Origin: Mobula birostris
Lineage: Eukaryota
NCBI RefSeq assembly: GCF_030028105.1
Contig: NC_092377.1
Location: 166,510,104-166,574,103, forward strand
Direction of reading: 5' to 3'
Length of the DNA stretch: 64,000 nt
The notes under the pieces were generated by a model, which saw nothing but the letters and a program-made list of their open reading frames with translations, made no database searches and was not told the DNA's origin. The translations under genes were made by a program, and so were the position numbers. This document shows, piece after piece, positions 2,549 through 60,195 of the stretch; within the stretch, counting starts at the first letter, position 1, and every line of letters begins with the position of its first letter.

Positions 2549-2699
2549 GGACGCCAGTGCTCAGCAGATCCTGACTGTGGCCCAGGAAAGTTCTGCCTTT
2601 CCTCTCGACGCGAAGAACCCATCTGTAGCCCTTGCAGAGGGATCAGGAGACGGTGCCACCGGGACACGATGTGCTGTGCAGGGAGCCACTGTCTGAATG
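2549..2699 (+). CDS. dkk4: Dickkopf-4 coding exon 2 (cysteine-rich domain 1)
   Basis: Acceptor ttccacag|GGA and donor AATG|gtaag. 151 nt, phase 0/1. Encodes GRQCSADPDCGPGKFCLSSRREEPICSPCRGIRRRCHRDTMCCAGSHCLN, the Dkk N-terminal Cys pattern, closely matching mammalian DKK4 exon 2 from memory. Confidence 0.93.
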
Positions 2700-2789
2700 G
2701 TAAGAGCTGTGCTAAGTTAACAGTGATCTTTCAGCAAAACCTTTGCTTCCTTTACAGGCAACAGGTAGATCTGCCCTTTCATGTACTTC

Positions 2790-3340
2790 AGGTCTATAGG
2801 AAATGGAGAGGGAAGTATCTCTCCAACAACTGTGGCTAACATATAGTTACTTGGGGTCCACATATATTGATCCCCCAACGTTGCTGCACAGGTTGATGAG
2901 GTGGTTAAGTAGGTGTATGGTGCGCTAGCCTTCATTTATCACGGGTTTGAGTTTGAGAGCTGCAAGGCAATGTTGCAGCTGCATGAAATGTTGGTTAGAT
3001 CACACTCGGAATATTGTGTTCAGTTGTGGTCACCTCATTATAGCAAAGATGAGGAAGCTTTAGAGAGGGTGCAGAGGAGATTTACTCGGATGCTGCCTGG
3101 ATTAAAGAGCATGTCTTATGAGGACAGGTTGAGTGAGTGAGGGCTTTTCTCTTTGGAGTGAAGGAAGAAGAGAAATGACTTGACAGAGGTGTAGATGAGG
3201 CATAGACAGATAGGGTGGACAACCAGCACCTTTTTCTCAGGCGGGAAAGGCTAACACAAGGGGCATAATTTTAAATTGATTGGAAGAAAGTACAGGACGG
3301 GTGTGAATGTCAGAGATAGGTTTTTTACAGAGTGGTGGGT
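2790..3340 (+). mobile_element. Degraded CR1 LINE 3' fragment
   Basis: HSEYCVQLWSPHYSKDEEALERVQRRFTRMLPGL, the CR1 ORF2 C-terminus. Confidence 0.8.
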
Positions 3341-4614: not shown

Positions 4615-4895
4615 CTCCTATCAGATTCCTTCGTCTTCAGCCTTTTATCTCTCACTTATTACTTCCTATCTTACTTCTGACTTCCCTCCTCCTCCCCCAC
4701 CCAACCTGGTCTCACCTATCAGCTCATACTCCTTCCTCTCCTGCCACCTTGTTCTGGGTTCTTCCCCCTTCCTTTCCGGTCCTGATGAAGGCTCTCGGCT
4801 CGAAATGTCGCCTGTTTATTCCTCTCCATTGATGCTGCCTGACCTGCTGAGTTCCTCCAGCATTTTGTGCGTGCTGTCCTTGGGGACACCTTCTA
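4615..4895 (+). mobile_element. Penelope terminal-repeat fragment with degenerate hammerhead motif
   Basis: Pyrimidine-rich tract, then ggtcCTGATGAaggctctcggctcGAAAtgtc (core from 4782), then the gatgctgcctgacctgctgagttcctccagc tail shared with 27224-27660. Confidence 0.75.
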
Positions 4896-17045: not shown

Positions 17046-17824
17046 TATATTTCTGACCGTTTTCTCACTCCAAAGAGCAAATCTGAGTGAGACTTACATT
17101 TATGCTTTCTCTCCATTTTGAGTTACCCTGGGGCATTCATAATGAGACAAGTTCATGACAAATAAATGTCTTGCCGCTACTTTAGTGGCACTTGACACAT
17201 ACATTAATCTTCAAGATAAACTTTTTTTTTCATACAGCCTTATAGACTTTCCCCTTCAATTGTAAAATGGCTTTCATAACTGGGGTTCTTTAATCATGTT
17301 TTAAACCCAAGTTGAGACTAGCTTCCCCAAGATAATATCCCGTCCTGCTGGAATGGGGCATAGAAACCATGGAGCATTACAGCACTGTACAGGCCTTCAG
17401 CCCAAAATGTTGTGCCAACCTTTTAATCTACTCCAAGATCAATCTAACTCTTCCCTTCCCACATAACCCTCAGTTTTTCTATCATCCATGTGCCTATCTA
17501 AAGGACTCGTAAATGTCCCTAATGTATCTGCCTCTACCACCATCCCAGTAGTACATTCACACAGCCACCTCTCTGTTTTTAAATAAAACCTATTTCTAAC
17601 ATTTTCTCCCTCCCCATACTTTCCTGCAATCACCATAAAGTTATGCCCCCTTGTATTAGGCATCTTCACCCTGGCTGTCCACTCGATCCATGTCCCAAGT
17701 CCTTGTTGATAGTTACAAAAAGACATGCCTTTGTAGTTCTAGTGACATCTTATGAAAATCAATACATTTACAAACCATTTTTTTTTGCAAATTCAGGACA
17801 TTCCACTGCAGACACAATATAGAG

Positions 17825-18027
17825 AAAGCAACACTCACAACACGCTGGAGGAACTCAGCAGGTTGGGCAGCATCCGTGGAAAAGATCGGTTGACGTTTCG
17901 GGCCGGAACCCTTCGTCAGGACGTCAGGTGTCCTGATGAAGGGTTCCGGCCCGAAACATCGACCGATCTTTTCCACTGGTTCTGCCGGACCTGCTGAGTT
18001 CCTCCAGCTCGTTGCGAGTGTTGCTTT
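17825..18027. repeat. Penelope-derived palindrome (two 98-bp arms, 7-nt loop)
   Basis: 17825-17922 is the reverse complement of 17930-18027 with few mismatches. Each arm is the Penelope terminal sequence. Confidence 0.92.
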
Positions 18028-18889
18028 GACCCCAGCGTCTGCAGATTATTTTGTATATAGAGAAAGTGTAGGGTGCTACAGTAGTGTGACACGATTATAG
18101 CTTGGAACATTTCGGAATTCAGAGCTCAGTTCCACCGCTGGCTGTAAGGAGTTTGTACACTTTCCCCAGAATCGTGTGGGCTTCATCCAGGCATTCTGGT
18201 TTCCTCCCAGAGTCTAAGGACATGTGGGTTGTTACTGTACATACAATGCACAGCCAAATTCTGTGCGGCAAGATCATACAACCTCCACTGATATGAAAGA
18301 AGAGGTAATTTGTTCTGTAATGTTGGATATTAGGTTTGTATTAACCGCAACACAAGAATTCTCTTGAGCATCTTAAAACTGTGCCAATGGATTTTGTACA
18401 TTTGCTAATGGCAGTAGGTTAGATCATGGTGTAATATTTTAGTCAGAAATTCAGCACCTCCAACAGAGAACTATGCATCACCTAAGTGTCAGCCCCAGTT
18501 AGATGCACAAGTGTACAAGCAGAGGTCAAAGGGTTACTATTTTCTTAATACAGAGACTATAAATGTGCCTCATCGATCAAAATGTTATTTGTCATCCTAA
18601 AGTAATCTGCCATTAAAGTATTTGATTGCAAGAAGCCTTTAATTCGTTACCTTCCACTTTATAGCCCGCCCAATAGATTACTGTGGTAATGAAAGGCTTA
18701 GCCTACTACTTAACACAGAATTGGCTTTCATTCTGCGGATTATTAGTGTCAAGTATTTGTTATCAGAAGCTGGACTCTTGCCAAATCAAGAATATTTTGG
18801 TTCTTTTAAATCTCTATTTTGGTAAGTTTTCAGAGTTCACTGAACAAGTTAATTGAGAAGCTGTAGTGACTGCATTGATTACAAGGGAA

Positions 18890-19425
18890 CTCATGCATGC
18901 ACACACAAACAGAGCTGGAGGAACTCAGAATATCAACATCAGTGTTTCGGGTCAAGACCCATCATCAGGACTAGAAAGGAAGGGGGAAGAAGCCAGAATT
19001 TCCCTATTCTGGATTTCCCCCCTCCCCCTTACCCTTTCTCTTCTTCTCACCCACCCACATCTCCCTCTGGTTTTCCTTCTTCCCTTTCTTCCATAGATGG
19101 CCCACTATCCTCTTCTATTAGCTTCCTCCTCCTTCAGCCCTTCACCTCTTCCACTGAAAACATCCCAGCTTCTTACTTTATCTCCCCCCGCCCCCCGGCT
19201 CACCTTCCACCACCCACCCTGGTCCCACCTGTCACCTGTCTGTTTGTATGCCTTCCACTCCCCCCAGTCACCTTATTCTGGCTTCTTCCCCTTTCCCTTC
19301 CAGCCCTGATGATGGGTCTCAGCCTGAAACGTCAACGGTTTATTTCCCTCCATGGATGCTGCCTGACCTGCTGAGTTCCTCCGGCACTTTGTGTATGTTG
19401 CACTGGATTTCCAGCCTCTGCAGAA
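18890..19425. mobile_element. Penelope-derived element with inverted terminal arms and a spacer
   Basis: gctggaggaactcag..catcatcaggac on the left and cctgatgatgggtctcagcctgaaacgtc..ctgagttcctcc on the right, separated by a pyrimidine-rich tract. Confidence 0.75.
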
Positions 19426-23600: not shown

Positions 23601-24673
23601 ATTGTGTCCAGTTCTGGTCACCTCACTATGGGAAGGGTGTGGAAGTATTGGAAAGGGTACAGAGGAGATTTATCAGGATGCTGCCTGGTTTAGAGAGTAT
23701 GCTTTATGATCAGAGATTAAGGGAGCTAGGGCTTTACTCTTTGGAGAAAGGGTGGATGAGAGGAGACATGATAGAGGTATACAAGATATTAAGAGGAATA
23801 GATAGAGTGGATAGCCAGCGCCTCTTCCCCAGGGCACCACTGCTCAATACAAGAGGACATGGTTTTAAGGTAAGGGGTGGGAAGTTCAAGGGGGATATTA
23901 GAGGAAGGTTTTTTACTCAGAGAGTGGTTGGTGCGTGGAATGCACTGCCTGAGTCAGTGGTGGAGGCAGATACACTAGTGAAATTTAAGAGACTGCTAGA
24001 CAGGTATATGGAGGAATTTAAGGTGGGGGGGGGGTTATATGGGAGGCAGGGTTTGAGGGTCGGCACAATATTGTGGGCTGAAGGGCCTGTACTGTGCTGT
24101 ACTAGTCTATGTTCTATGTATGTTATATAGGACCCTGGTCAGACCCCACGGAGTACTGTGCTCAGTTCTGGTTGCCTCACTACAGGAAGGATGTGGAAGC
24201 CATAGAAAGGGTGCAGGGGAGATTTACAAGGATGTTGCCTGGATTGGGGAGCATGCCTTATGAGAATGGGTTGAGTGAACTTGGCCTTTTCTCCTTGGAG
24301 CGACGGAGGACGAGGGGTGACCTGATAGAGGTGTATAAGATGATGAGAGGCTTTTGGATAGTCAGAGGCTTTTTTGCAGGGCTGAAATGGTTGCCACAAG
24401 AGGACACAGATTTAAGGTGCTGGGGAGTAGGTACAGAGGAGATGTCAGGGGTAAGTTGTTTTTTTACTCGTTGAATGCGTGGAATGGGCTGCCAGCAATG
24501 GTGGTGGAGGCGGATACGATAGGGTCTTTTAAGAGACACTTAGATAGGTACACAGAGCTTAGAAAAATAGCGAGCTATAGGTAAGCCTAGTAATTTCTAA
24601 GGTAGGGACATGTTTGACACAACTTTGTGGGCCGAAGGGCCTGTACTGTGCTGTAGGTTTTCTATGTTCTATG
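20696..24673 (+). mobile_element. CR1 LINE ORF2 (AP endonuclease and RT), frameshifted, interrupted by a second CR1
   Basis: YDVVAITETW and GDSDHN (APE); YRPVSLTS, GVPLGSVLGP and FADD (RT). Continues after the insert with TLVRPH..EYCAQFW and ends in a (TTCTATG)n tail. Confidence 0.93.
22924..24123 (+). mobile_element. Young 5'-truncated CR1 copy nested in the previous CR1
   Basis: Uninterrupted frame from about 22924 (DVIYMDFSKAFDKVPH..FADD..NALP) with its own 3' tail. The host reads gtaatgttgcag|..|tatataggaccc, contiguous as in the copy at 58590-58620. Confidence 0.9.
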
Positions 24674-27223: not shown

Positions 27224-29270
27224 TAAAGAAAACAACAGGAATTCTGCAGATGCTGGAAATTCAAGCAACACACATCAAAGTTGCTGGTGAACGCAGCAGG
27301 CCAAGCAGCATCTGTAGGAAGAGGTGCAGTCGATGTTTCAGGCTGAGACCCTTCGTCAGGACTAACTGAAGGAAGAGTGAGTAAGGGATTTGAAAGTTGG
27401 AGGGGGAGGGGGAGATCCAAAATGATAGGAGAAGACAGGAGGGGGAGGGATAGAGCCAAGAGCTGGACAGGTGATTGGCAAAAGGAGATACAGGAGGATC
27501 ATGGGACAGGAGGTCCAGGAAGAAAGACAAGGGCGGGGGCACCCAGAGGATGGGCAAGAGGTATATTCAGAGGGACAGAGGGAGAAAAAGGAGAGTGAGA
27601 GAAAGAATGTGTGCATAAAAATGAGTAACAGATGGGGTACGAGGGGGAGGTGGGGCCTTAGCGGAAGTTAGAGAAGTCGATGTTCATGCCATCAGGTTGG
27701 AAGCTACCCAGACGGAATATAAGGTGTTGTTCCTCCAACCTGAGTGTGGCTTCATCTTTACAGTAGAGGAGGCCGTGGATAGACATGTCAGAATGGGAAT
27801 GGGATGTGGAATTAAAATGTGTGGCCACTGGGAGATCCTGCTTTCTCTGGCGGACAGAGCATAGATGTTCAGCAAAGCGGTCTCCCAGTCTGCGTCGGGT
27901 CTCGCCAATATATAAAAGGCCACATCGGGAGCACCGGACGCAGTATATCACCCCAGTCGACTCACAGGTGAAGTGTTGCCTCACCTGGAGGGACTGTTTG
28001 GGGCCCTGAATGGTGGTAAGGGAGGAAGTGTAAGGGCATGTGTAGCACTTGTTCCGCTTACACAGATAAGTGCCAGGAGGGAGATCAGTGGGGAGGGATG
28101 GGGGGGACGAATGGACAAGGGAGTTGTGTAGGGAGCGATCCCTGCGGAATGCAGAAAGAGGGGGGGAGGGAAAGATGTGCTTAGTGGTGGGATCCCGTTG
28201 GAGGTGGCGGAAGTTACGGAGAATAATATGTTGGACCCGGAGACTGGTGGGTTGGTAGGTGAGGACCAGGGGAACCCTATTCCTAGTGGGGTGGCGGGAG
28301 GATGAAGTGAGAGCAGGTGTATGTGAAATGGGGGAGATGCGTTTAAGAGCAGAGTTGATAGTGGAGGAAGGGAAGCCCCTTTCTTTAAAAAAGGAAGACA
28401 TCTCCCTCATCCTAGAATGAAAAGCCTCATCCTGAGAGCAGATGCGATGGAGACGGAGGAATTGCGAGAAGGGGATGGCATTTTTGCAAGAGACAGGATG
28501 AGAAGAGGAATAGTCCAGATAGCTGTGAGAGTCAGTAGGCTTATAGTAGACATCAGTGGATAAGCTGTCTCCAGAGACAGAGATAGAAAGATCTAGAAAG
28601 GGGAGGGAGGTGTCGGAAATGGACCAGGTAAACTTGAGGGCAGGGTGAAAGTTGGAGGCAAAGTTAATAAAGTCAACGAGTTCTGCATGCGTGCAGGAAG
28701 CAGCGCCAATGCAGTCATCGATGTAGCAAAGGAAAAGTGGGGGACAGATACCAGAATAGGCATGGAACATAGATTGTTCCACAAACCCAACAAAAAGGCA
28801 GGCATAGCTAGGACCCATACGGGTGCCCATAGCTACACCTTTAGTTTGGAGGAAGTGGGAGGAGCCAAAGGAGAAATTATTAAGAGTAAGGACTAATTCC
28901 GCTAGACGGAGCAGAGTGGTGGTAGAGGGGAACTGATTAGGTCTGGAATCCAAAAAGAAGCGTAGAGCTTTAAGACCTTCCTGATGGGGGATGGAAGTAT
29001 ATAAGGACTGGACATCCATGGTGAAAATAAAGCAGTGGGGGCCAGGGAACTTAAAATCATCGAAAAGTTTAAGAGCGTGAGAAGTGTCACGAACATAGGT
29101 CGGAAGGGATTGAACAAGGGGTGATAAAACAGTGTCGAGGTATGCAGAAATGAGTTCGGTGGGGCAGGAGCAAGCTGAGACAATAGGTCGGCCAGGACAG
29201 GCAGGTTTGTGGATCTTGGGTAGGAGGTAGAAACGGGAAGTGCGGGGTGTGGGAACTATAAGGTTGGAAG
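27224..29270 (-). mobile_element. Penelope-like element, 5'-truncated: RT, GIY-YIG endonuclease and terminal repeat
   Basis: Open frame from about 29270 to 27658: FYLLPKIHKP..RPIVS, MDVQSLYTSI, GVAMGT..PSYA, YIDD, VIYCVRCSRCGLLYIGET..RF.EH. Inserted in a Rex-type tail with TGGAAG at both junctions (27218-27223, 29265-29270). Confidence 0.95.
27328..27363 (-). ncRNA. Minimal type I hammerhead ribozyme motif in the Penelope terminal repeat
   Basis: On -: AGUC-CUGACGA-AGGGUCUCAGCCU-GAAA-CAUC-GACU. Stems I and II are intact; the stem III palindrome is broken by one G>A change. Confidence 0.7.
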
Positions 29271-30309
29271 GAAAGAAGTTGTTTCTGAAATATTGAGCGT
29301 GTGTCTTCTGGTTCCTGTACCCTTCCCCTTGATGATAATAATGAGAAGAGGGCATGTCCTTCATGATGGATGCCACCTTTTTGAGGCATCGTCTTTTGAC
29401 GATAATTCTTTATAATTCCTTCTAAAGTTTTACTTCTGGGAAGTTAACATTACCACAAAAGGGGAGGGCAGCACAGAAATGTCAGAAGCTAATGGAAGGT
29501 AATAAAGGTTTTAGGACCTTACAGTCTGAAGCTGTGGAGAGAGGAGAAAGAAGGCCACCTGCAATGAATGTATTTAAGTAGCCAACTGATGTTCCTTCAC
29601 GGGGTTCATGCACAGTTAGTGAACATTCGGAGTGAGGAAATGGTGGGATGTTGGATGTCAGTAGCAGCACATTTGGGTCAGCGGAGGGAGACCCTGTTGT
29701 TGCATGAGTGGAGTCACTGGAGAAAAGTACTCATAGATATGAAGCAGCTTCTTTATTTGACAAAACGTGACACAGTAAACATCCAATTGAAAATGCTTTC
29801 GTTGGAAAGGTCTGGTTGGCCCATTGTGGGGTTCAATATTTTATGTGCTAAACATCAAAGAGCAATTCCATGATTTCTTTGAAACAACACACAAACTTCG
29901 CACCTCCCGATTCGCACCTACACCACAAACATCTAAATTAATTTTAATTAGCATTATCTGGGCTGTGATTCAAACTATTAGTAACCTATTGTTCAGAGCT
30001 GCATTTCAAATTAAGTCAAGCTATATTCAGATTTGAAGATTGGTGGCTGAAGTCATTTGCTAAACATAAACCCAGAAACACTCAAAACACTCAATCACTT
30101 CATTGCAGTGTAGAAACTTTGACAGTAGAAATTACAGCAAAACTCTTCCCAAGTTCTGTGGTGAGCAAGTAACCCAAATTGCATTACACCTTGTGGATCA
30201 GTTCCATAAATTTTTAATTTATTAATTATGTGGACAGCAGACATTTCGTGTACGGTCAACCCCTTCTAAGTATGTTAAATTATAGAACTTGGAATGAATT
30301 CATATTCTT

Positions 30310-35155: not shown

Positions 35156-38100
35156 CTCAGCTACAGATCAAGTTTAACTTTAGTATAAAGACCTATTTTT
35201 GTTAGTAATCTGACAGTCAATAGCTTTGTAGGCAAGGTTTCAAGAGGGACAGTTTATAAAGGGATAAAGCTGTGTATACCCACATGACAGAAAATAGAAG
35301 AACCAGTGTATAAACATTGAAGATTAATTTGGATGTAATTGGGGAATGGTTCTACTCCTGAAAAAGATGAAAAAATTCTTGAAAAAGGTAACTTTTTGAA
35401 CTGTCAATATTCCACAGCTGCACATTCCATCTTTGACATCTATTTCACATTTATATAGCAACTTCATAAAGATACTTCAAACCAATTAAGATCAAGTAAA
35501 TCATCTCTAATGTCCCAAGATGTAAATTAACTTTCTGTATAATTATTTTCCACACTAAATAGAATTTCACATGACAATTTTGAAATTATTCATACAACCC
35601 CTCTCAATTTTAATTCAAATTAATTTTATTAACTGAAGAGAAAAGATATTTTCCAAGATTCAAAGTACATTTATTATCAAAGTATGTATGCAGTATACAA
35701 CCCTGAAATTTGTCTTCCCCACAGACAGTCACGAAACAACGAAGAACTATGGAACCAACCTGTTCAAAGAAAAATATCAAATATCAAACCCCCTTCCCAG
35801 AGCAAAAAAATTGCACATACGGCAACAAAAAAGGGCAAAAACACAGAATACAAAACACAAAATCAAAAGGCATATTTCAGTTCAGTTCAGTTCCACTCAG
35901 TGTTATCTGCAGACTGCCCAAACGTAATAACAAAAACAAATGTATTTTTTTTAAAGCACAGTGAAACAAATTGCACCCAAAACAGGCAATTAAATCATGT
36001 TGTTATTTCTTCGAGCAACTTTGCAAATATTGTAAAAATTAAAAACAACAACCTCCGTGAAACAGTACACTGACACATATACCAGAGGAGAAAAGATAGG
36101 GGAACTGCAGACAATTTATAAGTTTGCTGAGTTTAATGTTTTTTTAAAGGAACACAATCCTTAAAATATCAAAGAAAACATTCATATAGTAAGTTCAGAA
36201 ATTGGCAGAATTTTTCACTTCGCATTTTTTATTCCATTAGGAAATAGTTCTGAACCAAATCTAAAATGTATAATCGCTCATGTTGTGATTATACAGTACC
36301 TGAATTGAACATTTTCAATTAGTTCTAAATAAGCATATTTTAATTTAAACTTTGAGACCAAAACAATTATTAACTGCAACCAAATTACTAACATAATTGC
36401 TTGAACGCCAGCTTGAACATAAATTGCTTAACTTAAGGACAGAGGTTTCAAGGCCTCATCTTGTTTCTGAAAAGCAAACTGCTGGAGCAATTCAGCAGGT
36501 CAGGTGGCATCTGTGGAGGCAGAGGGATGGTCAACATTTCAGACTGAGACTCTGCACCTGTACTGACACTTGACCCATTGAGTTCCTCCAATCATTTGCT
36601 CCAGGTTGTAATGTCTTCAGCCTCTTGTATATCCAAACTCTGAAGAAAGTATCCAACAGAAGTCCTACAGACAAAACAGATTATCTCCAATTTAAAACAC
36701 AAGAGATTCTGCAGATAGTGGAAATCAGCACAAACAAAATTGCTGGAGGAACTCAGCAGGTCAGGCAGCATCTATGGAGGGGAATAAATAGTTAATATTT
36801 CGGGCCAAAACCCGTCATCAGGATTTAAGCTTTTTCAGGGTATTGCCTACCCTGAAGAAGGTTAAATCTTCTCTTCAACGGGAGCTCAGTGAGACTCTCT
36901 CTCACTGCTTCCCCTCTGTGATCTTCAATTTAATCATCCAATATCTAGTTAGAATTTATCCTCAGCCCCAGACAGTTCATTGTTTAAAGATCTATCAAAC
37001 TGGAAAACCAACACATATCTATCACTTACATGTAACTTGAAAATTCTGATGCATGTACTGGGTTAATAATTTGCCAAATCTCAGATAGCGTTTCAAGATT
37101 TCTGGGTATATTTCACAGAGTTTAACTCAATTTTGAACTATGTCTCTCAAGCTTCTTAAAATACAGACTTTACTATTTCCAGCCACAAAGATGAAACTAC
37201 AAAAGTTTAAGTGGCTTCCAAATCTGCAAGCCCAACAACTAATGACACTGACTGAACAAGCAAGCAATTTGGCAGAAAAACTGCCGTGGTCATTATCGTT
37301 CACTCAGTCTGTCATTCATCGTGTTTCACAAAACAAGCGATTCTGCAGATGCTGGAAAGCTACAGCAACACACACTACATGCTGGAGGAACTCAGCAGGT
37401 CAGGCAGCATTTACGGAGGGGTTTGTTGACATTTTGGGCTGAGACCCTTCATTAGGATTTCCACGTTCCTATTCTTTTTCATTGTTGAAGACTGATCAAA
37501 ATCACACTATCTTTGCAATCTCCTGATTTTTTTTTATTACTTGGCCTCTCAAAGAGGACAATGCCAGAGAGGGTGCAGATGAGATTAAGCAGGATATGGC
37601 TGAAGCAGATAACATTATGTAGGGTAGATTACAGATAGAGCAGATCATAGAACACCATTCTCCAGAACATAAGTGTATAAAAACAAGAGAACATAAAATT
37701 AAGTGAAGGGATAGGAGGTTTAAGAGGACTCAGAGAATGGCGAATAGCCGGTCGATGGGAGTAGGTAGTTTAAATGGTTTCAGCATGGACTAGATGGGCC
37801 TGTTTCTGTGCTGTACTTTTCTATGGCTACGACTCTATACATTAGGATCATTTTTCATTATAATAAAAGAATAGAAGGACAAAGGAAAGTAGGCAGGAGT
37901 AGGCTATTGGGCCCCTCAAGCCTACTCTGCCATTCGAAATGATCATGGCTGGCTGTCCCAGGTCTCTACTGCTCTTCTCAGCCACTTCCACATAGTTTCA
38001 GTTGCTCAATCTTTCAGAAATTCTACTCTTTAAATAACTAATGATCTAGCCTCCATAACTCTCTGGGGCAGAGAATTCAAGAGATTTCATCACAAAAATT

Positions 38101-39200: not shown

Positions 39201-41124
39201 CTGCAATCAGAACAATACAGCATTAATGAGACAGGAAACTTTTTAAATATACATCACATCAGAGTGGAATAAAACCAGAAAACACTGGAAATACTCAGCA
39301 GGCCAGGTAGATTCTGTGGAGACAGAGAAAGATTCAATGCTTCAGAACACAAGAGATTTTGCAGATGCTGAACGCTGAGCAATGTGTATAGAATGCTGGA
39401 GTAAGTCAGGCAGCCAGGCTCCATAGAGGGGAGTAGAGAGTTGATGTTTTGGTCCAGAACTCTTCATCCAGACTTGATGATGAAGGTTCTTCACTTGAAA
39501 TGTTGACTATTTACTCTTCTACATAGATGCTGCCTGACTTACTGAGATCCTCAGTGTTTTAGAACAAACAGCTTCTATCTGAACCAAGAAAGCTTAAAAT
39601 AAATTATGCTTTCAGTTGCAAAAAAGGGAGAAATGCAGAGACAGCATTGGGAAAGTCTTGAATAGAGTGTGGCCCAAAAGTGACTGACTGAGACAAAGGG
39701 TGATGAAGTATGATTGACCTGGAGAAGGTGGACCTCGGCATTCACTTTCCCTATTAAAGCTAGCTAGGGAATAACAATGAAAACTAAATGTGCCTAAGAT
39801 TTTTGCACAGTACTGTATTTGACAACATGGAGTGGAGAGCAAGCTTGTAAATATGGTGGGAGTAAAGGATATTGGGAATGGCAAGGGTGGAGCACCGCTG
39901 GAGTGGTATAGGACAGGTGGCAGGAAGGAGTGCCAGGGGTAGGTGCAGACACGCCAGGCAAGGTCATTTGATTACAAACAATTGGTTCATTGATCATATA
40001 TTTCTTGTTGCAATTTATAGAAATTGATTATGCCTTGCACTGTACCGCTGTCACAAAACAACAAATTTCACAATATAATTTAGTGATAATAAATCTGATT
40101 CTGATATCCATGGTCTGGCAGAGGAGACTAAATCTCAAATTTCTATGTCTGAGTTTGGAGAAAGATGTAGAAATGCTTCAATGGAATACAAACAAATTGA
40201 GTATATGGGCAAGAACATGACAGATGTAATAGAGCGTGAAAAAAATACAAAGTTTTCCACTAGGATGCACAAAACAGAAATGTAAAGTCTATTTATCAAT
40301 TAGGGAATGGGTAATCTGATGTTTAAAGGGACCAAAGTCACTGACGGGAGGGCAATTGGTACGTTAACCTTTATTACAAGAGGGTCTGACTACATTGTTG
40401 CAGTGATATAGGTTGAGGTGAGACTAACTGCATCAGTTTTGCTCTCCTTACATAATTAAAAGATTACACTATACTTGCAAAGAGGAAACACAGTGAAGTT
40501 CACTATTCACAGCACCAGATCTCACCAAAGTTTCATTGAATGAAGGAACAAAGATTATTCTTTGTTGAAAACAACATTTTCAAATGTTGTGTAACAAACT
40601 TTGTATCAAATCTACAACAAACTTACTATTTAGCTAAGTTTTCATGCACTACATGTGCCCCCACCCTCTAGCCATTACACTAGGAACATGTCACTACCTC
40701 TGTATTATTTTTCCTTGTATTCCCAATGAATTTTTAGTGACCATCCTACACTTAACATATATGGTTTTAAAATCCCACAGTAGTAGGAACATTTTCTATA
40801 CATCTACTGCATTAAACTAATTCATTATCTGAGAAGTCATCAATAATTGCTCAGGAAAATACAGGATTAGAAACTTTTCATCGCTTTAAGACACCACTGA
40901 ACTGTCGCTCTGCAGGGAATCTACCCAGCTCTGACCGCAATTCCTTGACGGTTAAATTTTACCCTGAACATCATGTACAATAGAACTGGTACTGAACGAT
41001 TGGCACATGAAGAATATCTGATCAGGTTTTCAATAAGTTGAACAATTCTAACACACAAAAACATTCTGTAATTATTTTTTACCGGTCTTCGTATCTCTAA
41101 GCCAAAAGATTGAAAAGAGTGAAA

Positions 41125-43650: not shown

Positions 43651-43940
43651 ATCCAATCCAACGTGTTGACGACGCACATACCAACATTTTCTACCTCATT
43701 TATAGAGAGGATAAAATAGTTCAAATTGTAAACCTCTAGCTGGTAATTATTCCTGACTTTTATATTTTCTGAAGAGTTCTCCATCAAAATCCTTTATTTA
43801 TCATTTGCTGTGGGGTTCATAATTAAAAATCAAAGGCCCACTCTTAAAGCAGCTTAATTGTTTGGTTTTTAAAATTAGTTTATTAAAGAAATACTCAATC
43901 CATGTTTACATTGAGACTTCCAATATCATTCTGCTCCTAC

Positions 43941-44080
43941 CTGTGGTTCCCAGTGGGCGAATAGTGTACTCATTCAAGGTGAAGCCTTTCTCTAATGCCT
44001 GGGTCCGCATGTTCTTGTTAAAAAGATCACTGCCCGTGAAATAAAGCACACCGCAGAAATACTGATCTTTTGGAATAAGC
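43941..44080 (-). CDS. polb: DNA polymerase beta exon 13
   Basis: Acceptor tttttcttttag|G and donor ACAG|gtagga. 140 nt encoding (R)[46 protein letters not shown], with the X-family YFTGS motif. Confidence 0.97.
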
Positions 44081-44680: not shown

Positions 44681-45255
44681 TTAGGACAGAACATCAAAAT
44701 CATTTACAGAAGTTCCTGTTTTCTTATTGCCAGATCAAAAGTCCTCACTGGAACAGACTCACAGCTCTTATTATATTTTAACCTTATTAAGTTTTCTTCA
44801 ACATTTAATTTATGAATAATATAACACTGGACATGCTTCAAGATGGTTTTATTGACTTCATTTTGAAGCTTGCCAGTTGCACTCTGTTGGTGGAAAATGC
44901 TCACCCTGTGGTATCAAATGTGAATTGAAAGAGGAAAGAAAACGGAGTTCAAGATATCCACTGTTCTTAAGCTAAAAACAAAGATAAACACAATGACAAT
45001 TTAGACAGATATATTATGCTGGAAGATCAACAAGAGTGGTAAATTTGCCTAAATGGAAAATATACACTAATTAACACTAGAATGGTAAAGATAATCATAA
45101 AACCAACTATAGACTCAGTATAGTTGGGAGGAACAAAAGGCTGTCCATTGCGACAGAGATGAAACATAAAATACAGAAGAGTACAGCACAGTGAGCTCTT
45201 TGGCCCACAACATTGTGCTGACCTATATAAATGCTCACAATTAACATAAACCTTT

Positions 45256-45386
45256 GCAACTGACGAAGGGTCTCGGCCTGAAACGTCGACTGTACCTCTT
45301 CCTAGAGATGCTGCCTGGCCTGCTGCATTCCCCAGCAACTTTGATGTGTGTTGCTTGAATTTCCAGCATCTGCAGAATTCCTGTTG
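45256..45386 (+). mobile_element. 131-bp Penelope tail insertion with a 15-bp TSD
   Basis: TTAACATAAACCTTT at 45241-45255 and 45387-45401. The insert carries CTGACGA-AGGGTCTCGGCCT-GAAA-CGTC-GACTG. Confidence 0.9.
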
Positions 45387-45547
45387 TTAACATAAACCTT
45401 TCCTCCATTTTTCTTTCATCCATGTGTCTATCTCAGAATTGGCCTCAATGTATCTGCCTCTATACCACTCCTGGCAGTACATTCTAGGCACCCACCACTC
45501 TCTGTGTAAAAAAAAACCTACCTTTGACATCTTCCCTAAACTTTCCT

Positions 45548-51106: not shown

Positions 51107-53245
51107 TCAATAAGCCCATAAGCTGTTGGAGCAGAATTAGGCAATTTGGCCCATTGAGTTTACTCTGCCATTTCATCATGGCTGACTCATCTTTCCTCTG
51201 AGCCCCAGTCACCTGCCTTCCCCAGTCTCCTGCCTTCCCCCAATCTCCTGCCTTCCTCCCAGTCTCCTGCCTTCCCCCGATCTCCTGCCTTCCCCCCCGT
51301 CTCCTGCTTTCCCCTGGTTTCCTGCCTTCCCCCAGTCTCCTGCCTTCCCCCAGTCTCCTGCCTTCCCCCAGTCTCCTGCCTTCCCCCAGTCGCCTGCCTT
51401 CTCCAGTCTCCTGCCTTCCCCCAGTCTCCTGCCTTCCCCCAGTCTCCTGCTTTCCCCCAGTCGCCTGCCTTCCCCAGTCTCCTGCCTTCCCCCAGTCTCC
51501 TGCCTTCCCCCGTCTCCTGCCTTCCCCCAATCTCCTGCCTTCCCCCAATCTCCTGCCTTCCCCAGTCTCCTGCCTTCCCCCCATATCCCTTCATGCCCTG
51601 AACCCTCTCCAGTTTCAACACATCCTTCCTAAGATAAGGGGCGAAACACTGCTCACAATCTCTAAGTGAAGCCTCAAAGGTGCTTTATAAAGTCTCGACA
51701 TCACACCTTTGCTTTTATATTCCAGTCCTCTTGAAAGGAATATTAACATTGTATTTTCCTTCCTCACCACAGACTCAACCTGCAAATTAACCTTTAGGGA
51801 ATCCTGCACGAGGATTCCCAAATCCCTTTTGTATTTTCTCTCCATTTAGAAAATAATCAACCTTTTCATTCCTTCTGTCAAAGTGCATGACCACACACTT
51901 CCCAACACTATTCTATCTGCCACTTCTTTGCCCATTCTCCGAATCCAAGTCCTTCTCTAGCTGCTTTATTTCCTCAAAACTACCCGCACCTATCTTTGTA
52001 TCATCTGCAAACTTTGCAGCAAGGCCTCAATTCCACCATCCAAATCACTGACATATAGCGTAAAAAGAATAGGTCCTGACACAGACCCCTCTGGAACACC
52101 AGGTTCTTAGTCACCAGCAGCCAGCCAGAAAAGGTTCCCTGATTCCTATTCTTTGCTTCCTGCTAATTAGCTACCATTTTGTCCATACTAAAACTTGCCC
52201 ATAATACCATGAACTCATAGCTTGTTAAGCAGCTTCATGTGTGGCACCTTGTCAAAGGCCATCTGAAAATCCAAGTACACAACATCAACCGAATCTCCGT
52301 TGTCTATCCTACATGTTAATTCTTCAAAGAATTCCAACAGATTTGTCAGGTAAGATTTTCCCTTGAGGAAACCATGCTGACTATGGCCCATTTTATCATG
52401 TGCCTCCAAGTACCCTGAGACCTCATCCTTAATAATCAACTCCAACATCTTCCCAAACACTGAGGTCAGACTAACTGGCCTATAATTTCCTTTCTTCTCC
52501 CTTCTTGAAGAGCGGACTGACATTTCCAATCTTCCAGTCTTCTGGAACCGTCCAGGATCTAGTGGTACTTGAAAGATCATTACTGATGCCTCCACAATCT
52601 CTTCAACCACCTCTTTCAGAACCCTGGTCACCATCTGATCCAAGTGACTTGTCTACCTTCAGACTTTTCAGTTTCCCCAAGAACTTTCTCCCTAGTAATG
52701 GTAATTTCACACACTTCATGACCCCTGACACCTGGAACTTTCACCATACTACTAGTTTCTTCACAGTAAAGACTGATGCAAAACGCTTATTCAGTTTATC
52801 TGTCATTTCCTTGTCTCCCCACTGCTACCTCTCCAGCATTGTTTTCCAGCGGTCCAATATCCACTCTTGCCTCTCTTTTACACTTTATGTATCTGAAAAT
52901 ACTTTTGGTATCTTCTTTAATATTATTGGCTAGCTTACTTGCATATTCCATCTTTACCCCCTTAATGGTTTTTTTGTTGCCTTCCGTTGGTATTTAAAAA
53001 CTTCCCAATACTCTAACTTCCCACTAGTATTTGCTCTATTTTATGCCTTCTCTTTGGCCTTTATGTTGGCTTTGACTTCTCTTGTTAGCCATGGTTGTGT
53101 TATCTTGCTTTTAGAATACTTCTTCCTCTTTGGGATGTAAATATCCTGCGGCTTCTGAATTGCTTCCAGAAATTCCAGCCACTGCTGTCACCCGTGCCAG
53201 TGTCTTTTCCAATCAAATCTGGCCAACTCCTCTCTCAGTTTTGTT
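51107..53245 (-). mobile_element. CR1 LINE fragment (RT and 3' tail) containing a minisatellite
   Basis: NYRPVSLTS..GKSYLTNLLEFFE..DFQMAFDKVPH, on -. Confidence 0.85.
51203..51582. repeat. Minisatellite, about 21 copies of an ~18-bp unit (CCCCAGTCTCCTGCCTTC)
   Basis: Directly counted tandem units of 17-20 nt with no unique spacers. Confidence 0.95.
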
Positions 53246-53424
53246 CAGTAGTTTTATTGTTTGGTTAACCACCCTCCACCACTCATCTCTGATGACAGCT
53301 TGCCATAATACAAAATGGAAGAACACATACCAGCCCTCAGTGAGGGGTCAGCGGTAAAAAAGGTGAGCAGCTTCAAGTTCCGGGTATCAACATCTCAGAG
53401 TATCCATCTGAGCCCAACACCTTA

Positions 53425-53952
53425 AAGCCACACACAGGTTGGAGGAACAACACCTTATATTCTGTCTGGGTAGCCTCCAACCTGATGGCATGAACATGGA
53501 CTTCTCAAACTTTCGCTAATGCCCCACCTCCCCCTCGTACCCCATTCATTACTTATTTATATACACACATTCTTTCTCTCTCTCTCCTTTTTCTCCCTCT
53601 GTCCCTCTCACTATACCCTTTGCCCATCCTCTGGGTTTTCCCCCCTCCCCCTTTTCCTTCTCCCTGGGCCTCCCGTCCCATGATCCTCTCATATCCCTTT
53701 TGCCTATCACCTGTCCAGCTCTTGGCTCCATCCCTCCCCCTCCTGTCTTCTCCTATCATTTTGGATCTCCCCTTCCCCCTCCACCTTCAAATCTCTTACT
53801 AGCTCTTCCTTCAGTTAGTCCTGACGAAGGGTCTCGGCCTGAAACGTCGACTGTACCTCTTCCTAGAGATGTTGCCTGGCCTGCTGTATTCACCAGCAAC
53901 TTTGATGTGTGTTGTTTGAATTTTCAGCATCTGCAGAATTCCTCGTGTTTGC
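53425..53952 (+). mobile_element. Penelope 3' fragment (GIY-YIG end and terminal repeat)
   Basis: LEEQHLIFCLGSLQPDGMNMDFSNFR*, followed by the same terminal repeat as 27224-27660. Confidence 0.92.
53817..53852 (+). ncRNA. Intact minimal type I hammerhead ribozyme motif
   Basis: AGUC / CUGACGA / AGG-GUCUCGG-CCU / GAAA / CGUC / GACU. All core nucleotides are present, with a GUC cleavage triplet (C53848) and a self-complementary ACGU stem III. Confidence 0.8.
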
Positions 53953-54744
53953 GTTAACAAATTTCACCAGATAGTTAGTGATAATAAACCTAGCTCTGAT
54001 TCTGAAGAAGGTCAGAGAAAAAGCCTTTGTAATCAGAGAATAATAATGTTCAGAAATAAAAAACTAACATCATGAAATGTTCAGCAGGTCAGGCAGCATC
54101 AATGAATCCATTACACAAATAATATTGGAGAATCACCAATGAGGAACAGTTGGCAAGTTTGAAACTTCTTGCTTGAGTGGGAATACCCACAGTTTACAAA
54201 GACATTCCCTGGCAAGTTCGAGTCCATTGATTTAGAATTTAAATCAGTTTCTTAACTGTTCAATGATTCGAAAGCATGCCCAGCAGAATGGTGAAAAACT
54301 AAATGAAAAAACACAAAGAAAAGCAAGCCAATGAAATATATTACACAACAGCTTTATCAACAGTCTTTTCCATGACGTTTTTCTGAAAAAAATCCCTAAG
54401 ACCATAAAACATAGGAATAGAATTAGGCCTTTTGGGCCCATCAAATTTGCTCCACCATTCCAACATGGCTTATTTATTTTCCATCCCAACCGCATTCTGT
54501 TTTCTTCTCCCTGTAACCTCTGACACCTTATTAATCAGAACCTATCAACTTCCACTTTAAAGATACCCAATGACTTGGCCTCCACAGCTGCCTGTTGCAA
54601 TGAATTCCACAGATTCATCACCCTTCTGGCTACAGAAATTTCTCTTCATCTCTGTTCTAAAGGGACATCCTTTTATTCTGAGCCTCTGCCCTCTGGTCTT
54701 AGAATAACCCACTACAGGGAACATCTTCTCCACGTCCATTCTAT

Positions 54745-55290: not shown

Positions 55291-55502
55291 TATTCAATAG
55301 GTTTTAATGAGATCCCTCCTCATTCTTCTGAAATCCAGCAAACCATCAAACTGCCCTCATATGTAAATCCTTTCATTTCTGGGATCATTCTCATGATTTC
55401 TAAACATTGAATCAGGACATTGTAGACCACATGATAAGAGAGGTACATTATGGAAATTAGTAGATATTCCAGTTAGCTTTAAATACTCTGGAATTAACGC
55501 AC

Positions 55503-55567
55503 CTAATGTCAATTCTCCTGAATGGATAATCACTGCCATCACTGTCATCTGGCAATCGGCAGACACC
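55503..55567 (-). CDS. polb: DNA polymerase beta exon 12 (catalytic Asp256)
   Basis: Acceptor ctttgaacag|GGT and donor TTAG|gtgcgt. 65 nt encoding GVCRLPDDSDGSDYPFRRIDI(R). Phase 2 fits exon 13. Confidence 0.95.
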
Positions 55568-57702: not shown

Positions 57703-60195
57703 TTTAGAACATAAAACATAGAACATAAAACATAGAACATAGAAAACCTACAGCACAATACAGGCCCTTTGGCCCTCAAAGTTGTGCCGAACATGTCCCT
57801 ACCTTAGAAATTACTAGGCTTACCTAAAATAAAGGCATCCGTTAGTCTTGCGAGACCATGGATCTGTGCCTGGAAAGTCTTCACTCTCCAGGGCGCAGGC
57901 CTGGGCAAGGTTGTATGGAAGACCAGCAGTTGCCCATGCTGCAAGTCTCCCCTCTCCACGATATCAATGTTGTCCAAGGGAAGGGCACTAGGACCCATAC
58001 AGCTTGGCACCAGTGTCATCGCAGAGCAATGTGTGATTAAGTGCCTTGCTCAAGGACACACTGCGTTCCCTTGGCTGGGGCTCGAGCTCACGACCTTCAG
58101 GTCGCTAGTCCAATGCTTTAACCACTTGGCCACGTGCCCATCTATAGCCCTCTATTTTACAAAGCTCCATGTACCTATCTAAATGTCCCTTAAAAGACCC
58201 TATCATATCCGCCTCCACCACCATTGCCGGCAGCCCATTCCACGCACTCAGAGCTCTCTGAGTAAAAAACTTACCCGAAATCTCCTCTGTACCTACTCCC
58301 CAGCACCTTAAACCTGTGTCCTCTTGTGGCAACCATTTCAGCCCTGTGAAAAAGCCTCTGACTATCCAAAAACCTCTCATCATCTTATACACCTCTATCA
58401 GGTCACCTCTCATCCTCCGTCGTTCCAAGGAGAAAAGGCCAAGTTCACTCAACCTGTTCTCATAAGGCATGCTCCCCAATCCAGGTAACATCCTTGTAAA
58501 TCTCCTCTGCACCCTTTCTATGGCTTCCACATCCTTCCTGTAGTGAGGCGATCAGAACTGAGCACAGTACTCTAAGTGGGGTCTGACCAGGGTCCTATAT
58601 AGCTGCAACATTACCCCTCGGCTCCTAAATTCAATTCCACGATTGATGAAAGCCAATACACCATATGCCTTCTTAACTACAGAGTCAACCTGCGCAGCTG
58701 CTTTCAGCATCCTATGGACTCGGACTCCAAGATCCTTCTGATCCTCCAACACTGCCAAGAGTCTTATCATTAATACTATACCCTGCCATCATATTTGAAC
58801 TACCAAAATGAACCACTTCACACTTACCTGGGTTGAACTCCATCTGCCACTTCTCAGGCCAGTTTTGCATCCTATCAATGTCCCGCTGTAACCTCTGACA
58901 GCCCTCCACACTATTCACAACACCGCCAAGCTTTGTGTCATCAGCAAACTTACCAACCCATCCCTCCACAGGTCATTTATAAAAATCACAAAGAGTAAGG
59001 GTCCCAGAACAGATCCCTGAGGCAGACTACTAGTCACCGACCTCCATGCAGAATATGACCCGTCTACAACCACTCTTTGCCTTCTGTGGGCAAGCCAATT
59101 CTGGATCCACAAAGCAATGTCCCCTTGGATCCCAGGCCTCCTTACTTTCTCAATAAGCCTTGCATGGAGTACCTTATCAAATGCCTTGCTGAAATCCATA
59201 TGCACTACATCTACTGCTCTTCCTTCATCAATGTGTTTAGTCACATCCTCAAAAAATTCAATCAGGCTCGAAAGGCATGACCTGCCCTTGACAAAGCTGT
59301 GCTGACAACTCCTAATCATATTATGCCTCTCTAAATGTTCATAAATCCTGCCTCTCAGGATCTTCTCCATCAACTTACCAACCACTGAAGTAAGACTCAC
59401 TGGTCTATAATTTCCTGGGCTATCTCCACTCCCTTTCTTGAATAAGGGAACAACATTCGCAACCCTCCAATCCTCTGGAATCTCTCCCATTCCCATTGAT
59501 GATGCAAAGATCATTGCCAGAGGCTCAGCAATCTCTTCCCTCGCCTCCCACAGTAGCCTGGGGTACACCTCACCTGGTCCCGGCGACTTATCCAACTTGA
59601 CGCTTTCCAAAAGCTCCAGCACATCCTCTTTCTTAATATCTACATGCTCAAGCTTTTCAGTCCACTGCAAGTCAGCACTACAACCACCAAGATCATTTTC
59701 CATAGTGAATACTGAAGTAAAGTATTCATTAAGTACCTCTGTTATTTCCTCCGGTTCCATACACACTTCCCACTGTCACACTTGATAGGTCCTATTCTTT
59801 CACGTCTTATCCTCTTGCTCTTCACATACTTGTAGAATGCCTTGGAGTTTTCCTTAATCCTGCCCGCCAAGGCCTTCTCATGGTCCCTTCTGGCTCTCCT
59901 AATTTCCTCCTTAAGCTCCTTCCTATTAGCCTTATAATCTTCTAGATCTCTAACATTACCTAGCTCTCTGAACCTTTTGTAAGATTTTTTTTTCTTCTTG
60001 ACTAGATTTATTACAGCCTTTGTACACCGCGGTTCCTGTACCCTACCATAACTTCCCTGTCTCATTGGAACGTACCTATGCAGAACTCCACACAAATATC
60101 CCCTGAATATTTGCCACATTTCTTCCGTACTTTTTCCTGAGAACATCTGTTTCCAATTTAAGCTTCCAATTTCCCGCCTGATAGCCTCATAATTA
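57703..60195 (-). mobile_element. CR1 LINE (RT and tail), same subfamily as 20696-24673
   Basis: Colinear with 21325-24673. YRPVSLTS, FADD and a (CATAGAA)n tail at 57703-57745. Confidence 0.92.
57827..58139 (-). mobile_element. tRNA-headed SINE inserted in the CR1 3' UTR
   Basis: Host taccta|tagccc is split by the insert. A-box TGGCCAAGTGG and B-box-like GCTCGAGCC. Confidence 0.85.

What the first reader, a model, noticed from the sequence alone, without database searches (positions are those of the whole stretch)
53817..53852. Intact minimal hammerhead ribozyme in a Penelope terminal repeat inside polb intron 12
Seen in the sequence: AGUC-CUGACGA-AGGGUCUCGGCCU-GAAA-CGUC-GACU. This gives a 4-5 bp stem I, the complete CUGANGA/GAAA core, a 3-bp stem II, a GUC triplet and a loopless, self-complementary ACGU stem III. 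Established: Penelope-like elements carry such minimal type I hammerheads, which are thought to cleave as dimers through the palindromic stem III. Inference: this ray Penelope family spreads self-cleaving RNA motifs through genes. At least 8 recognisable relatives lie in this window (cores near 4782, 17913, 17933, 18960, 19306, 27353, 36815, 45260), and no ORF track or gene model shows them.
Basis: partly seen in the sequence, partly recalled or inferred. Interest (0 to 1): 0.72.

Follow-up and report, generated by a model that had tools for sequence, protein, structure and literature searches.

The report
Penelope hammerhead motif, dead intronic copy
The 36-base motif is a real, sequence-intact copy of the small hammerhead RNA fold that Penelope-like jumping genes are already known to carry, but it sits in a truncated, probably dead copy on the strand opposite the host gene, so it is an ordinary member of a known kind.

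Summary
It is a Penelope-type minimal type I hammerhead: complete CUGANGA/GAAA core, GUC site (cut predicted after C53848), 5-bp helix I, and a palindromic ACGU in place of helix III. Helix II reads better as the family's invariant unpaired A (53828) plus 4 bp, closed by G·U instead of the usual G-C.

It lies in the 3' UTR of a 5'-truncated Penelope-like element (53424-53956). A longer copy (27224-29406, minus strand) encodes RT plus GIY-YIG.

Only the focal copy is intact; the others are CpG-decayed or lack helix I. Across Penelope lineages helices I and II covary strongly. Within the window the hammerhead is kept no better than the adjoining tail.

The polb exons are on the minus strand. The motif is therefore in the penultimate polb intron but antisense, and polb pre-mRNA does not carry it.

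Catalysis is untested. The active dimer fold is predicted to be disfavoured, which fits the weak, protein-assisted activity that has been published.

Verdict: a young, dead copy of a known kind. Low interest.

The parts
53817..53852 (+). Minimal type I hammerhead motif. Helix I 5' strand 53816-53820; core C3-A9 53821-53827; unpaired A 53828; helix II with loop 53829-53840; G12-A14 and A15.1 53841-53844; palindrome ACGU 53844-53847; C17 53848 (predicted cut between 53848 and 53849); helix I 3' strand 53849-53853.
53424..53956 (+). 5'-truncated Penelope-like element copy: last 31 codons of the ORF, 3' UTR, hammerhead and tail. It is 89% identical to 27752-27224(-).
53424..53519 (+). Remnant of the C-terminal end of the RT/GIY-YIG ORF, with its stop codon at 53517-53519.
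53853..53956 (+). About 105-nt tail after the hammerhead. Together with the hammerhead it forms the module shared by all Penelope subfamilies in the window.
27224..29406 (-). Longer, still 5'-truncated copy of the same family. Its 572-aa ORF (27658-29376) carries RVT_1 and GIY-YIG and matches residues from about 340 to the end of 890-930-aa relatives.
27328..27363 (-). Hammerhead of that copy, decayed at two CpGs: ACGU has become ACAU, so the palindrome is lost, and there is a change in loop II.
45260..45395 (+). Copy 94.6% identical to the focal module that starts at CUGA, so it lacks the 5' strand of helix I. Antisense to polb, in the same intron.
17829..18054 (.). Head-to-head fold-back of two hammerhead-plus-tail arms (minus arm to 17927, plus arm from 17925). 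It is flanked by a perfect 12-bp target-site duplication at 17817-17828 and 18055-18066.
4774..4817 (+). Decayed relative: helix II is weakened and ACGU has become AUGU.
18933..18976 (-). Decayed relative: the helix III/cleavage-site region is broken.
36786..36829 (-). Decayed relative: GUC has become AUU and helix I is broken.
19298..19341 (+). Relative with core and ACGU kept but helix I broken. It belongs to another subfamily with a different 3' UTR.
55502..55567 (-). polb exon coding sequence, residues 237-258. This is the upstream exon of the host intron.
43939..44079 (-). polb exon coding sequence, residues 259-305. This is the downstream exon of the host intron.

Best explanation
The motif is the hammerhead module of a Penelope-like retrotransposon (RT plus GIY-YIG class). 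It was copied into the penultimate polb intron as part of a 533-bp, 5'-truncated target-primed reverse-transcription product, in antisense orientation. In active, tandemly arranged master elements this kind of hammerhead has no helix III of its own. Two copies pair through the palindrome A15.1-C-G-U16.1 and through swapped helix I strands to form a double hammerhead, which cuts after C17. According to the literature the cut is slow and helped by the element's own protein (inferred here, not shown). At this locus the motif most likely does nothing. It is intact because the copy is young, not because it is under selection. The polb transcript carries only its complement.
For: Shown directly:
- Exact motif with 0 expected by chance.
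- The carrier is 89% identical to the 3' end of a copy encoding RVT_1 plus GIY-YIG.
- That ORF has 1037 homologues. Full-length ones are 890-930 aa, so both window copies are 5'-truncated.

Association and structure in relatives chosen by protein only (80 metagenome loci):
- My descriptor hits 17 times on the ORF strand and once on the other, against 0.13 expected in shuffles.
- 14 of 50 loci with enough 3' flank have a hit 77-854 nt after the ORF.
- R1 gives 28 hits, 25 of them on the sense strand, and L001 has one on each side of an 889-aa ORF.
- Helices I and II covary: 88 cells changed on both sides against 27.6 in shuffles, and 89% paired against 28-42% when the partner is slid.
- The unpaired A after A9 is present in all 28 hits, G10.1-C11.1 in 25 of 26, and 15.2-16.2 is always self-complementary.

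Young, neutral copy:
- All four CpGs of the motif are intact here, while sister copies differ mainly at those CpGs.
- The focal copy differs from the family majority at 13 or more of 533 positions, none of them in the motif. About one would be expected there by chance.
- Within the window the hammerhead (70% mean pairwise identity) is no better kept than the tail (66%).

Other:
- Antisense to polb.
- The literature describes exactly this motif class, its dimer model and its weak or protein-assisted activity (PMC4209133, PMC11167929, PMC6765202).
Against: - No cleavage or expression data could be obtained. The only raw-read runs were DNA from other species that lack the family. The possible RNA runs were contigs, which cannot show RNA ends.
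- The focal motif has G10.1.U11.1 where 25 of 26 relatives have G-C. Only 26-36% of family depth in two runs has C there.
- Nearest-neighbour energies disfavour the active fold. The double hammerhead is -12.7 kcal/mol against -32.7 for the best dimer. The monomer prefers a hairpin that pairs G5-G8 with C15.2-C17: -12.2 against -7.6, z = -0.65.
- pLTR organisation was not seen for this family.
- The pair counts come from motifs picked by a descriptor or a model that demand pairing, so the percentage paired is inflated. The variety of pair types and the strand and position bias are the independent part.
Confidence: 0.85

Rival explanations
1. In Penelope-like elements the motif is kept mainly as a structured RNA or protein-binding element for the reverse transcriptase, not for self-cleavage. 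The hammerhead resemblance is a relic, and cutting is incidental.
For: For the Anolis Poseidon element, catalytic hammerhead mutants did not affect insertion in vitro. Cleavage needed the element's protein, and no RNA-seq reads began or ended at the cut site (PMC11167929). Metazoan minimal hammerheads cut poorly even as dimers (PMC4209133). Here the active fold is predicted to be disfavoured, and most of the ray family has G.U at 10.1-11.1. Copies keep the roughly 105-nt tail past the cut site, so the RNAs that were inserted were uncut at the 3' motif.
Against: Every catalytic core nucleotide and the N-U-H site are conserved across lineages whose helices have changed completely. That is hard to explain without selection for catalysis. 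C3G/G8C rescue experiments in Anolis show true ribozyme chemistry.
Confidence: 0.2
2. The focal motif belongs to a separate non-autonomous, retrozyme-like or SINE-like short element rather than to a truncated autonomous Penelope copy.
For: Most module copies in the window start within a few bases of the 5' edge of helix I. Contig depth rises 5-7 fold at 53813-53817. A preprint derives animal retrozymes from Penelope pLTRs (10.64898/2026.07.22.740005).
Against: The focal copy continues 393 nt upstream of the motif into the 3' UTR and the last 31 codons of the RT/GIY-YIG ORF, colinear with the coding copy. There is no tandem array at or near the site. The two commonest upstream sequences are 3' UTRs of other Penelope subfamilies.
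Confidence: 0.03
3. The motif acts locally, for example by cutting an antisense transcript of the polb intron or otherwise affecting polb expression.
For: The motif is sequence-intact and lies inside a gene.
Against: It is on the strand opposite polb. No partner motif lies nearby on the same strand for dimer formation; the nearest, at 45260, lacks helix I. Nothing indicates plus-strand transcription. The intactness is what a copy of this age would show by chance.
Confidence: 0.03
4. It is a chance match to the short hammerhead consensus.
For: Minimal descriptors are permissive and Rfam gives no hit.
Against: 0 matches are expected in shuffles. The motif sits at the homologous position downstream of a Penelope ORF, as in unrelated hosts. 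It also shares features that no descriptor demanded: the unpaired A and G10.1.
Confidence: 0.01

Closest known systems
Minimal hammerheads (min-HHR) of metazoan Penelope-like elements (Cervera and de la Pena 2014, PMC4209133; Lunse et al. 2017, cited through PMC6765202)
   Same: Type I topology and full catalytic core. No helix III loop, with palindromic 15.2-16.2. An unpaired nucleotide between A9 and 10.1. Short helix I. Located in the non-coding flank of an RT/GIY-YIG element on the sense strand, with many dispersed single copies from truncated elements and some pairs on opposite strands.
   Different: The closing pair of helix II is G.U in the focal copy and in most of the ray family, instead of G-C. 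Helix II is short (4 bp, two of them wobbles), where the Schistosoma families have 7-8 bp. The host group (rays) was not among the genomes described in that paper.
Poseidon element of Anolis carolinensis (PAc) and its protein-assisted hammerhead (Frangieh et al. 2024, PMC11167929)
   Same: A vertebrate Penelope-like element with a hammerhead in the pLTR. Insertions carry a characteristic tail. The endonuclease cuts and extends both DNA strands, which fits the head-to-head fold-back with a 12-bp target duplication at 17829-18054.
   Different: In PAc the ORF starts inside the hammerhead. Here the motif is seen about 300 nt after the stop codon, and its position relative to the start codon is unknown because no full-length copy was found.
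Non-LTR retrozymes of animals (Cervera and de la Pena 2020, PMC7229834; Li et al. 2026 preprint)
   Same: Type I hammerheads with a weak, palindromic helix III. Thought to derive from Penelope pLTRs and to be mobilised by Penelope proteins.
   Different: Retrozymes are head-to-tail tandem arrays of a 170-400-nt unit that give circular RNAs. The focal copy is single, carries an ORF remnant and is not in an array.
Double hammerheads of newt satellite 2 and avocado sunblotch viroid (Forster et al. 1988, cited through PMC4209133)
   Same: An unstable helix III makes the monomer inactive. Two units form one extended helix III.
   Different: Those have a 2-3-bp helix III with a loop. Here nothing remains beyond the palindrome.

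Membership tests
Minimal type I hammerhead of Penelope-like elements | Catalytic core C3 U4 G5 A6 N7 G8 A9 and G12 A13 A14 | tested here: met
   53821-53827 reads CUGACGA and 53841-53843 reads GAA, followed by A15.1.
Minimal type I hammerhead of Penelope-like elements | Cleavage triplet N-U-H before helix I | tested here: met
   G53846 U53847 C53848.
Minimal type I hammerhead of Penelope-like elements | Open-ended helix I formed by the flanks (type I) | tested here: met
   53816-53820 pairs with 53849-53853: 4 Watson-Crick pairs plus one U.G.
Minimal type I hammerhead of Penelope-like elements | Helix II hairpin preceded by one unpaired nucleotide after A9 | tested here: met
   A53828 is unpaired. 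All 28 model hits in other Penelope loci also have an A there. Helix II has 4 pairs with loop CUCG.
Minimal type I hammerhead of Penelope-like elements | G10.1-C11.1 closing pair (highly conserved, per PMC4209133) | tested here: not met
   G53829 faces U53840, a wobble. 25 of 26 relatives have G-C. C at 53840 makes up 26-36% of family depth in two runs and is seen in 6 of 12 window copies.
Minimal type I hammerhead of Penelope-like elements | No helix III hairpin; A15.1/U16.1 with self-complementary 15.2-16.2, allowing a dimer | tested here: met
   ACGU at 53844-53847. Relatives have CG, UA, GC, AU or CGCG at these positions, always palindromic.
Minimal type I hammerhead of Penelope-like elements | Lies in the non-coding flank of a Penelope-like element, on the sense strand | tested here: met
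   It lies 298 nt after the ORF stop of the carrier copy, on the same strand. In relatives the strand split is 17:1 by descriptor and 25:3 by model.
Minimal type I hammerhead of Penelope-like elements | Compensatory changes in helices I and II among relatives | tested here: met
   Met across lineages. Among the 12 window copies there are no compensatory changes, only CpG-type decay.
Minimal type I hammerhead of Penelope-like elements | Mg-dependent self-cleavage after C17, as a dimer | not testable with these tools
   No raw RNA reads were available. The energy model disfavours the active fold.
Rfam hammerhead families (for example Hammerhead_1) | Score at or above the family's gathering threshold | tested here: not met
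   No hammerhead hit at gathering score over the window, nor at E up to 10 over 53700-53950. From my own knowledge, not checked here: those models include a helix III hairpin, which this variant lacks.
Penelope-like element, endonuclease-positive | Reverse transcriptase domain | tested here: met
   RVT_1 at E = 4e-6, 27.1 bits, just under Pfam's 29.6 cut-off. 1037 homologues at E below 1e-10, many carrying PF00078.
Penelope-like element, endonuclease-positive | C-terminal GIY-YIG endonuclease | tested here: met
   GIY-YIG at residues 475-549, 21.7 bits against a cut-off of 22.6. Homologues carry PF01541. The GVIY...YIGET motif with Cys-x2-Cys-x2-Cys between its halves is visible in the translation. 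That this insert is typical of the class is from my own knowledge.
Penelope-like element, endonuclease-positive | ORF flanked by direct pseudo-LTRs, each with a hammerhead | tested here: inconclusive
   Both window copies and the Mobula copy L084 are 5'-truncated, so no upstream repeat could be seen. The arrangement is present in relative L001, with motifs at 329 and 3319 around an ORF at 546-3215.
Penelope-like element, endonuclease-positive | 5'-truncated and inverted head-to-head insertions with target-site duplications | tested here: met
   The copies at 53424 and about 29406 are truncated. The fold-back at 17829-18054 has a 12-bp duplication.
Non-LTR retrozyme | Head-to-tail tandem array of hammerhead units without coding sequence | tested here: not met
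   No tandem array at the site, and the copy carries an ORF remnant.

The most novel reading that the evidence does not exclude
The roughly 135-nt hammerhead-plus-tail module of this ray family may be a retrotransposition template in its own right, an RNA whose 5' end is set at the 5' edge of helix I by a start site or a processing step other than hammerhead cleavage. It would be inserted either singly or as fold-backs by priming on both DNA strands. That would make it a minimal non-autonomous partner of Penelope elements, and an in vivo trace of the two-strand priming so far seen only in vitro.
Probability: 0.15. Interest if true: 0.5.

Novelty: new member of a known kind. Interest (0 to 1): 0.17.

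Why it matters
It matters little beyond annotation. It confirms that this ray genome, like fish, amphibian and reptile genomes, is peppered with Penelope-derived hammerhead motifs that gene and ORF tracks do not show, and that a simple covariance model finds them. It also gives a caution for such scans: an 'intact' motif in a young dead copy says nothing about function at that locus, and orientation relative to the host gene has to be checked. The G.U closing pair of helix II in most of the family, and the clustering of copy starts at helix I, are small points a ribozyme or transposon laboratory could test.

Tried and rejected
- Rfam at gathering score and at E up to 10 gave no hammerhead hit.
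- tRNA scan for a SINE head: none found.
- Tandem-repeat scan for a retrozyme array: none at the site.
- Sequencing runs: no run on record as RNA holds the stretch. The two raw-read DNA runs come from other species and matched only the CT-rich low-complexity part. The two possible RNA runs are contigs, so no RNA ends, strand or expression could be read.
- Joints from near the ORF end to 53817 in those contigs do not have GT..AG ends. I read them as other subfamilies with different 3' UTRs, not as splicing.
- Search for a full-length family member to test the terminal-repeat claim: the window copy and a Mobula hypostoma copy (L084) are both 5'-truncated.
- Lunse et al. 2017 is not held in the library, so it is cited only through a review.
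- The search of earlier findings by place and for polb returned nothing.
- I considered a splice-acceptor reading of the pyrimidine tract plus CAG just upstream of helix I, by analogy with Drosophila virilis Penelope (PMC4209133). I found nothing to test it with.
- I did not build any consensus or repaired version of the element.

Full report
**Observation.**
- The core pattern CTGANGA, a short spacer, then GAAACGTC occurs four times in the window, against none in 100 dinucleotide shuffles.
- I wrote a stricter descriptor. It requires the core, helix I of at least 3 bp, helix II of at least 3 bp with an optional one-base bulge, a self-complementary 15.2-16.2, and then U and H. It is met at only this one place in 64 kb, counting both strands.
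- Rfam 15 reports no hammerhead at gathering score over the window, nor at E up to 10 over 53700-53950. I take this to reflect that, as I recall them, those models expect a helix III hairpin, which this variant lacks.

**Anatomy.**
- Helix I is 53816-53820 with 53849-53853: four Watson-Crick pairs and one U.G.
- The core C3-A9 is 53821-53827, and G12 to A15.1 is 53841-53844.
- The palindrome ACGU at 53844-53847 replaces helix III.
The paper describing these motifs lists an extra nucleotide between A9 and 10.1 as a hallmark (PMC4209133), and all 28 relatives I collected have an A there.
- On that reading the closing pair is G53829.U53840, a wobble. Relatives have G-C in 25 of 26 cases.

**What carries it.**
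- The stretch 53425-53956 is 89% identical to 27752-27224 on the minus strand.
- That sister copy follows a 572-aa ORF (27658-29376, minus strand) with RVT_1 and GIY-YIG hits just under Pfam's cut-offs.
- The ORF has 1037 homologues at E below 1e-10. The best are from the rays Mobula hypostoma (94%) and Hypanus sabinus (77-87%), followed by sharks and many invertebrate-derived sequences at about 50%.
- Full-length relatives are 890-930 aa and align only from about residue 340 onwards, so the 27-29 kb copy is 5'-truncated.
- The focal copy is a shorter stub: the last 31 codons, the stop at 53517-53519, a CT-rich 3' UTR, the hammerhead and a tail of about 105 nt.
- This is the RT plus GIY-YIG architecture of Penelope-like elements.

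**Relatives in the window.** nhmmer with the hammerhead-plus-tail module finds 14 copies.
- I built covariance model R1 from 18 motifs, 17 of them from other organisms.
- With filters off it finds nine sites at E of 0.1 or below.
- Read base by base, only the focal site is whole:
  - 27328-27363 and 17925-17968 have ACAU instead of ACGU.
  - 17884-17927, 36786-36829 and 19298-19341 have lost helix I.
  - 45252-45293 starts at CUGA and has no 5' strand for helix I.
  - 4774-4817 and 18933-18976 are broken in helix II or at the cleavage site.
- The variable positions are mostly the four CpGs of the motif.
- Mean pairwise identity among 12 copies is 70% in the hammerhead, 66% in the tail and 39% upstream.
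- So, once inserted, the motif decays like its surroundings.

**Is the structure selected anywhere?** To test this without circularity I fetched 80 metagenome loci using the protein only.
- In their 262 kb the descriptor hits 17 times on the ORF strand and once on the other strand, against 0.13 expected for both strands in shuffles.
- 14 of 50 loci with at least 150 nt of 3' flank have a hit 77-854 nt after the ORF.
- R1 finds 28 sites, 25 of them sense. Eight of these (in seven loci) were not seeds, and L001 carries identical motifs on both sides of an 889-aa ORF, which is the classic pseudo-LTR layout.
- On these alignments helices I and II change completely between lineages while staying paired. 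88 cells are changed on both sides against 27.6 in shuffles. 89% of cells are paired, against 28-42% when the partner column is slid by 1-3.
- Caveat: the motifs were picked by tools that demand pairing, so the percentage paired is inflated. The independent evidence is the strand and position bias, the variety of pair types, and features nobody asked for (the unpaired A, G10.1, the palindrome).
- This reproduces what Cervera and de la Pena reported in 2014.

**Family abundance.**
- Two contig data sets from two organisms hold thousands of contigs matching the stub.
- Summed depth jumps 5-7 fold at 53813-53817 and falls at about 53948.
- Inside the motif the only listed variant at 10% or more is T53840C, at 26-36%. 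That table was truncated, with 31 rows not shown.
- The focal copy differs from the family majority at 13 or more of 533 positions, none of them in the motif. At that divergence about one change in 36 nt would be expected, so an intact motif needs no selection at this locus.

**Host gene.** Short Pol beta motifs located three coding pieces on the minus strand.
- Two were confirmed against solved Pol beta structures: residues 237-258 at 55567-55502 (E = 2e-5) and residues 259-305 at 44079-43939 (E about 1e-24).
- The last exon, with its stop codon, is at 39201-39109.
- The motif therefore lies in the penultimate intron. That is intron 12 if the gene has 14 exons as in human, which I state from my own knowledge.
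- It is on the opposite strand, so the polb pre-mRNA contains only the complement, which is not a hammerhead.
- The other well-preserved copy in this intron (45260) is also antisense.

**Would it cut?** This could not be tested.
- The nearest-neighbour model gives the monomer a hairpin that pairs G5-G8 with C15.2-C17: -12.2 kcal/mol, z = -0.65 against shuffles. The hammerhead-like fold scores -7.6.
- The double-hammerhead dimer scores -12.7, against -32.7 for the best dimer.
- Such models ignore tertiary contacts. Even so, the result agrees with published work: metazoan minimal hammerheads cut weakly even as dimers (PMC4209133). The Anolis Poseidon hammerhead cuts only with the element's protein, is dispensable for insertion in vitro, and leaves no read ends in RNA-seq (PMC11167929).
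- No RNA evidence was available here. The raw-read runs were DNA from species lacking the family, and the possible RNA runs were contigs.

**Verdict.**
- The functional inference is overstated. The copy is a young, truncated, antisense insertion; eight of the nine motifs in the window are broken; the terminal-repeat layout was not seen for this family; and self-cleavage is untested.
- The kind is well described, and the scan's own notes already list many hammerhead findings in this genome. Those are unchecked leads, not evidence.
- Interest is low.

**In passing.**
- 17829-18054 is a head-to-head pair of hammerhead-plus-tail arms that meet at the 5' edges of their helix I. A perfect 12-bp duplication flanks it at 17817-17828 and 18055-18066.
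- A second, older pair sits at 39346-39555.
- This fits the two-strand cleavage and extension seen for Poseidon in vitro. Other agents' notes on this genome describe similar stubs and fold-backs.
- Why copies so often begin at helix I remains unexplained. Hammerhead cleavage would leave a 5' end 32 nt further downstream.

Noticed in passing
window 17817-18066: A fold-back insertion. A minus-strand arm (17829-17927) and a plus-strand arm (17925-18054) of hammerhead plus tail meet head to head at the 5' edges of helix I. They are each other's closest relatives and are flanked by a perfect 12-bp direct repeat (17817-17828 and 18055-18066). This looks like one insertion event primed on both DNA strands, or a snap-back.
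   Followed up: partly
window 39346-39555: A second, more decayed head-to-head pair of hammerhead-plus-tail arms. It lies in the last polb intron just upstream of the final exon. No clear target duplication was found.
   Followed up: partly
window 53813-53817 and the other module copies: Homology between Penelope subfamilies, and many copy starts, begin within a few bases of the 5' edge of helix I. Contig depth in two runs rises 5-7 fold there. Hammerhead cleavage cannot explain this end, because it would cut 32 nt downstream.
   Followed up: partly
window 53800-53816: A pyrimidine tract ending in CAG lies just upstream of helix I, two bases before it, and looks like a 3' splice site. The 19298 subfamily has a similar tract abutting helix I. 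In Drosophila virilis Penelope the intron ends at helix I (PMC4209133).
   Followed up: no
L001:329-372 and L001:3319-3362; L083:3073-3116: Hammerheads of marine-metagenome Penelope elements with C instead of U at core position 4. In L001 the change is identical in both flanking repeats of an intact 889-aa ORF, so it may be a tolerated natural core variant.
   Followed up: no
window 51203-51581: About 21 tandem copies of an 18-bp C-rich unit, 89% matching, inside the same polb intron.
   Followed up: no
window 21922-24474 (+), 58915-59766 (-), 629-1456 (+): Other retroelement remains unrelated to Penelope: two adjoining RVT_1 ORFs at about 22-24 kb, an RVT_1 ORF at 59 kb inside polb, and a zf-RVT ORF near the window start.
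   Followed up: no
window 54060-54110 (-): A very decayed minus-strand fragment of the Penelope tail, with a 20-base exact match to other tails at 54081-54100. It lies about 100 nt past the 3' end of the focal copy, tail to tail.
   Followed up: no
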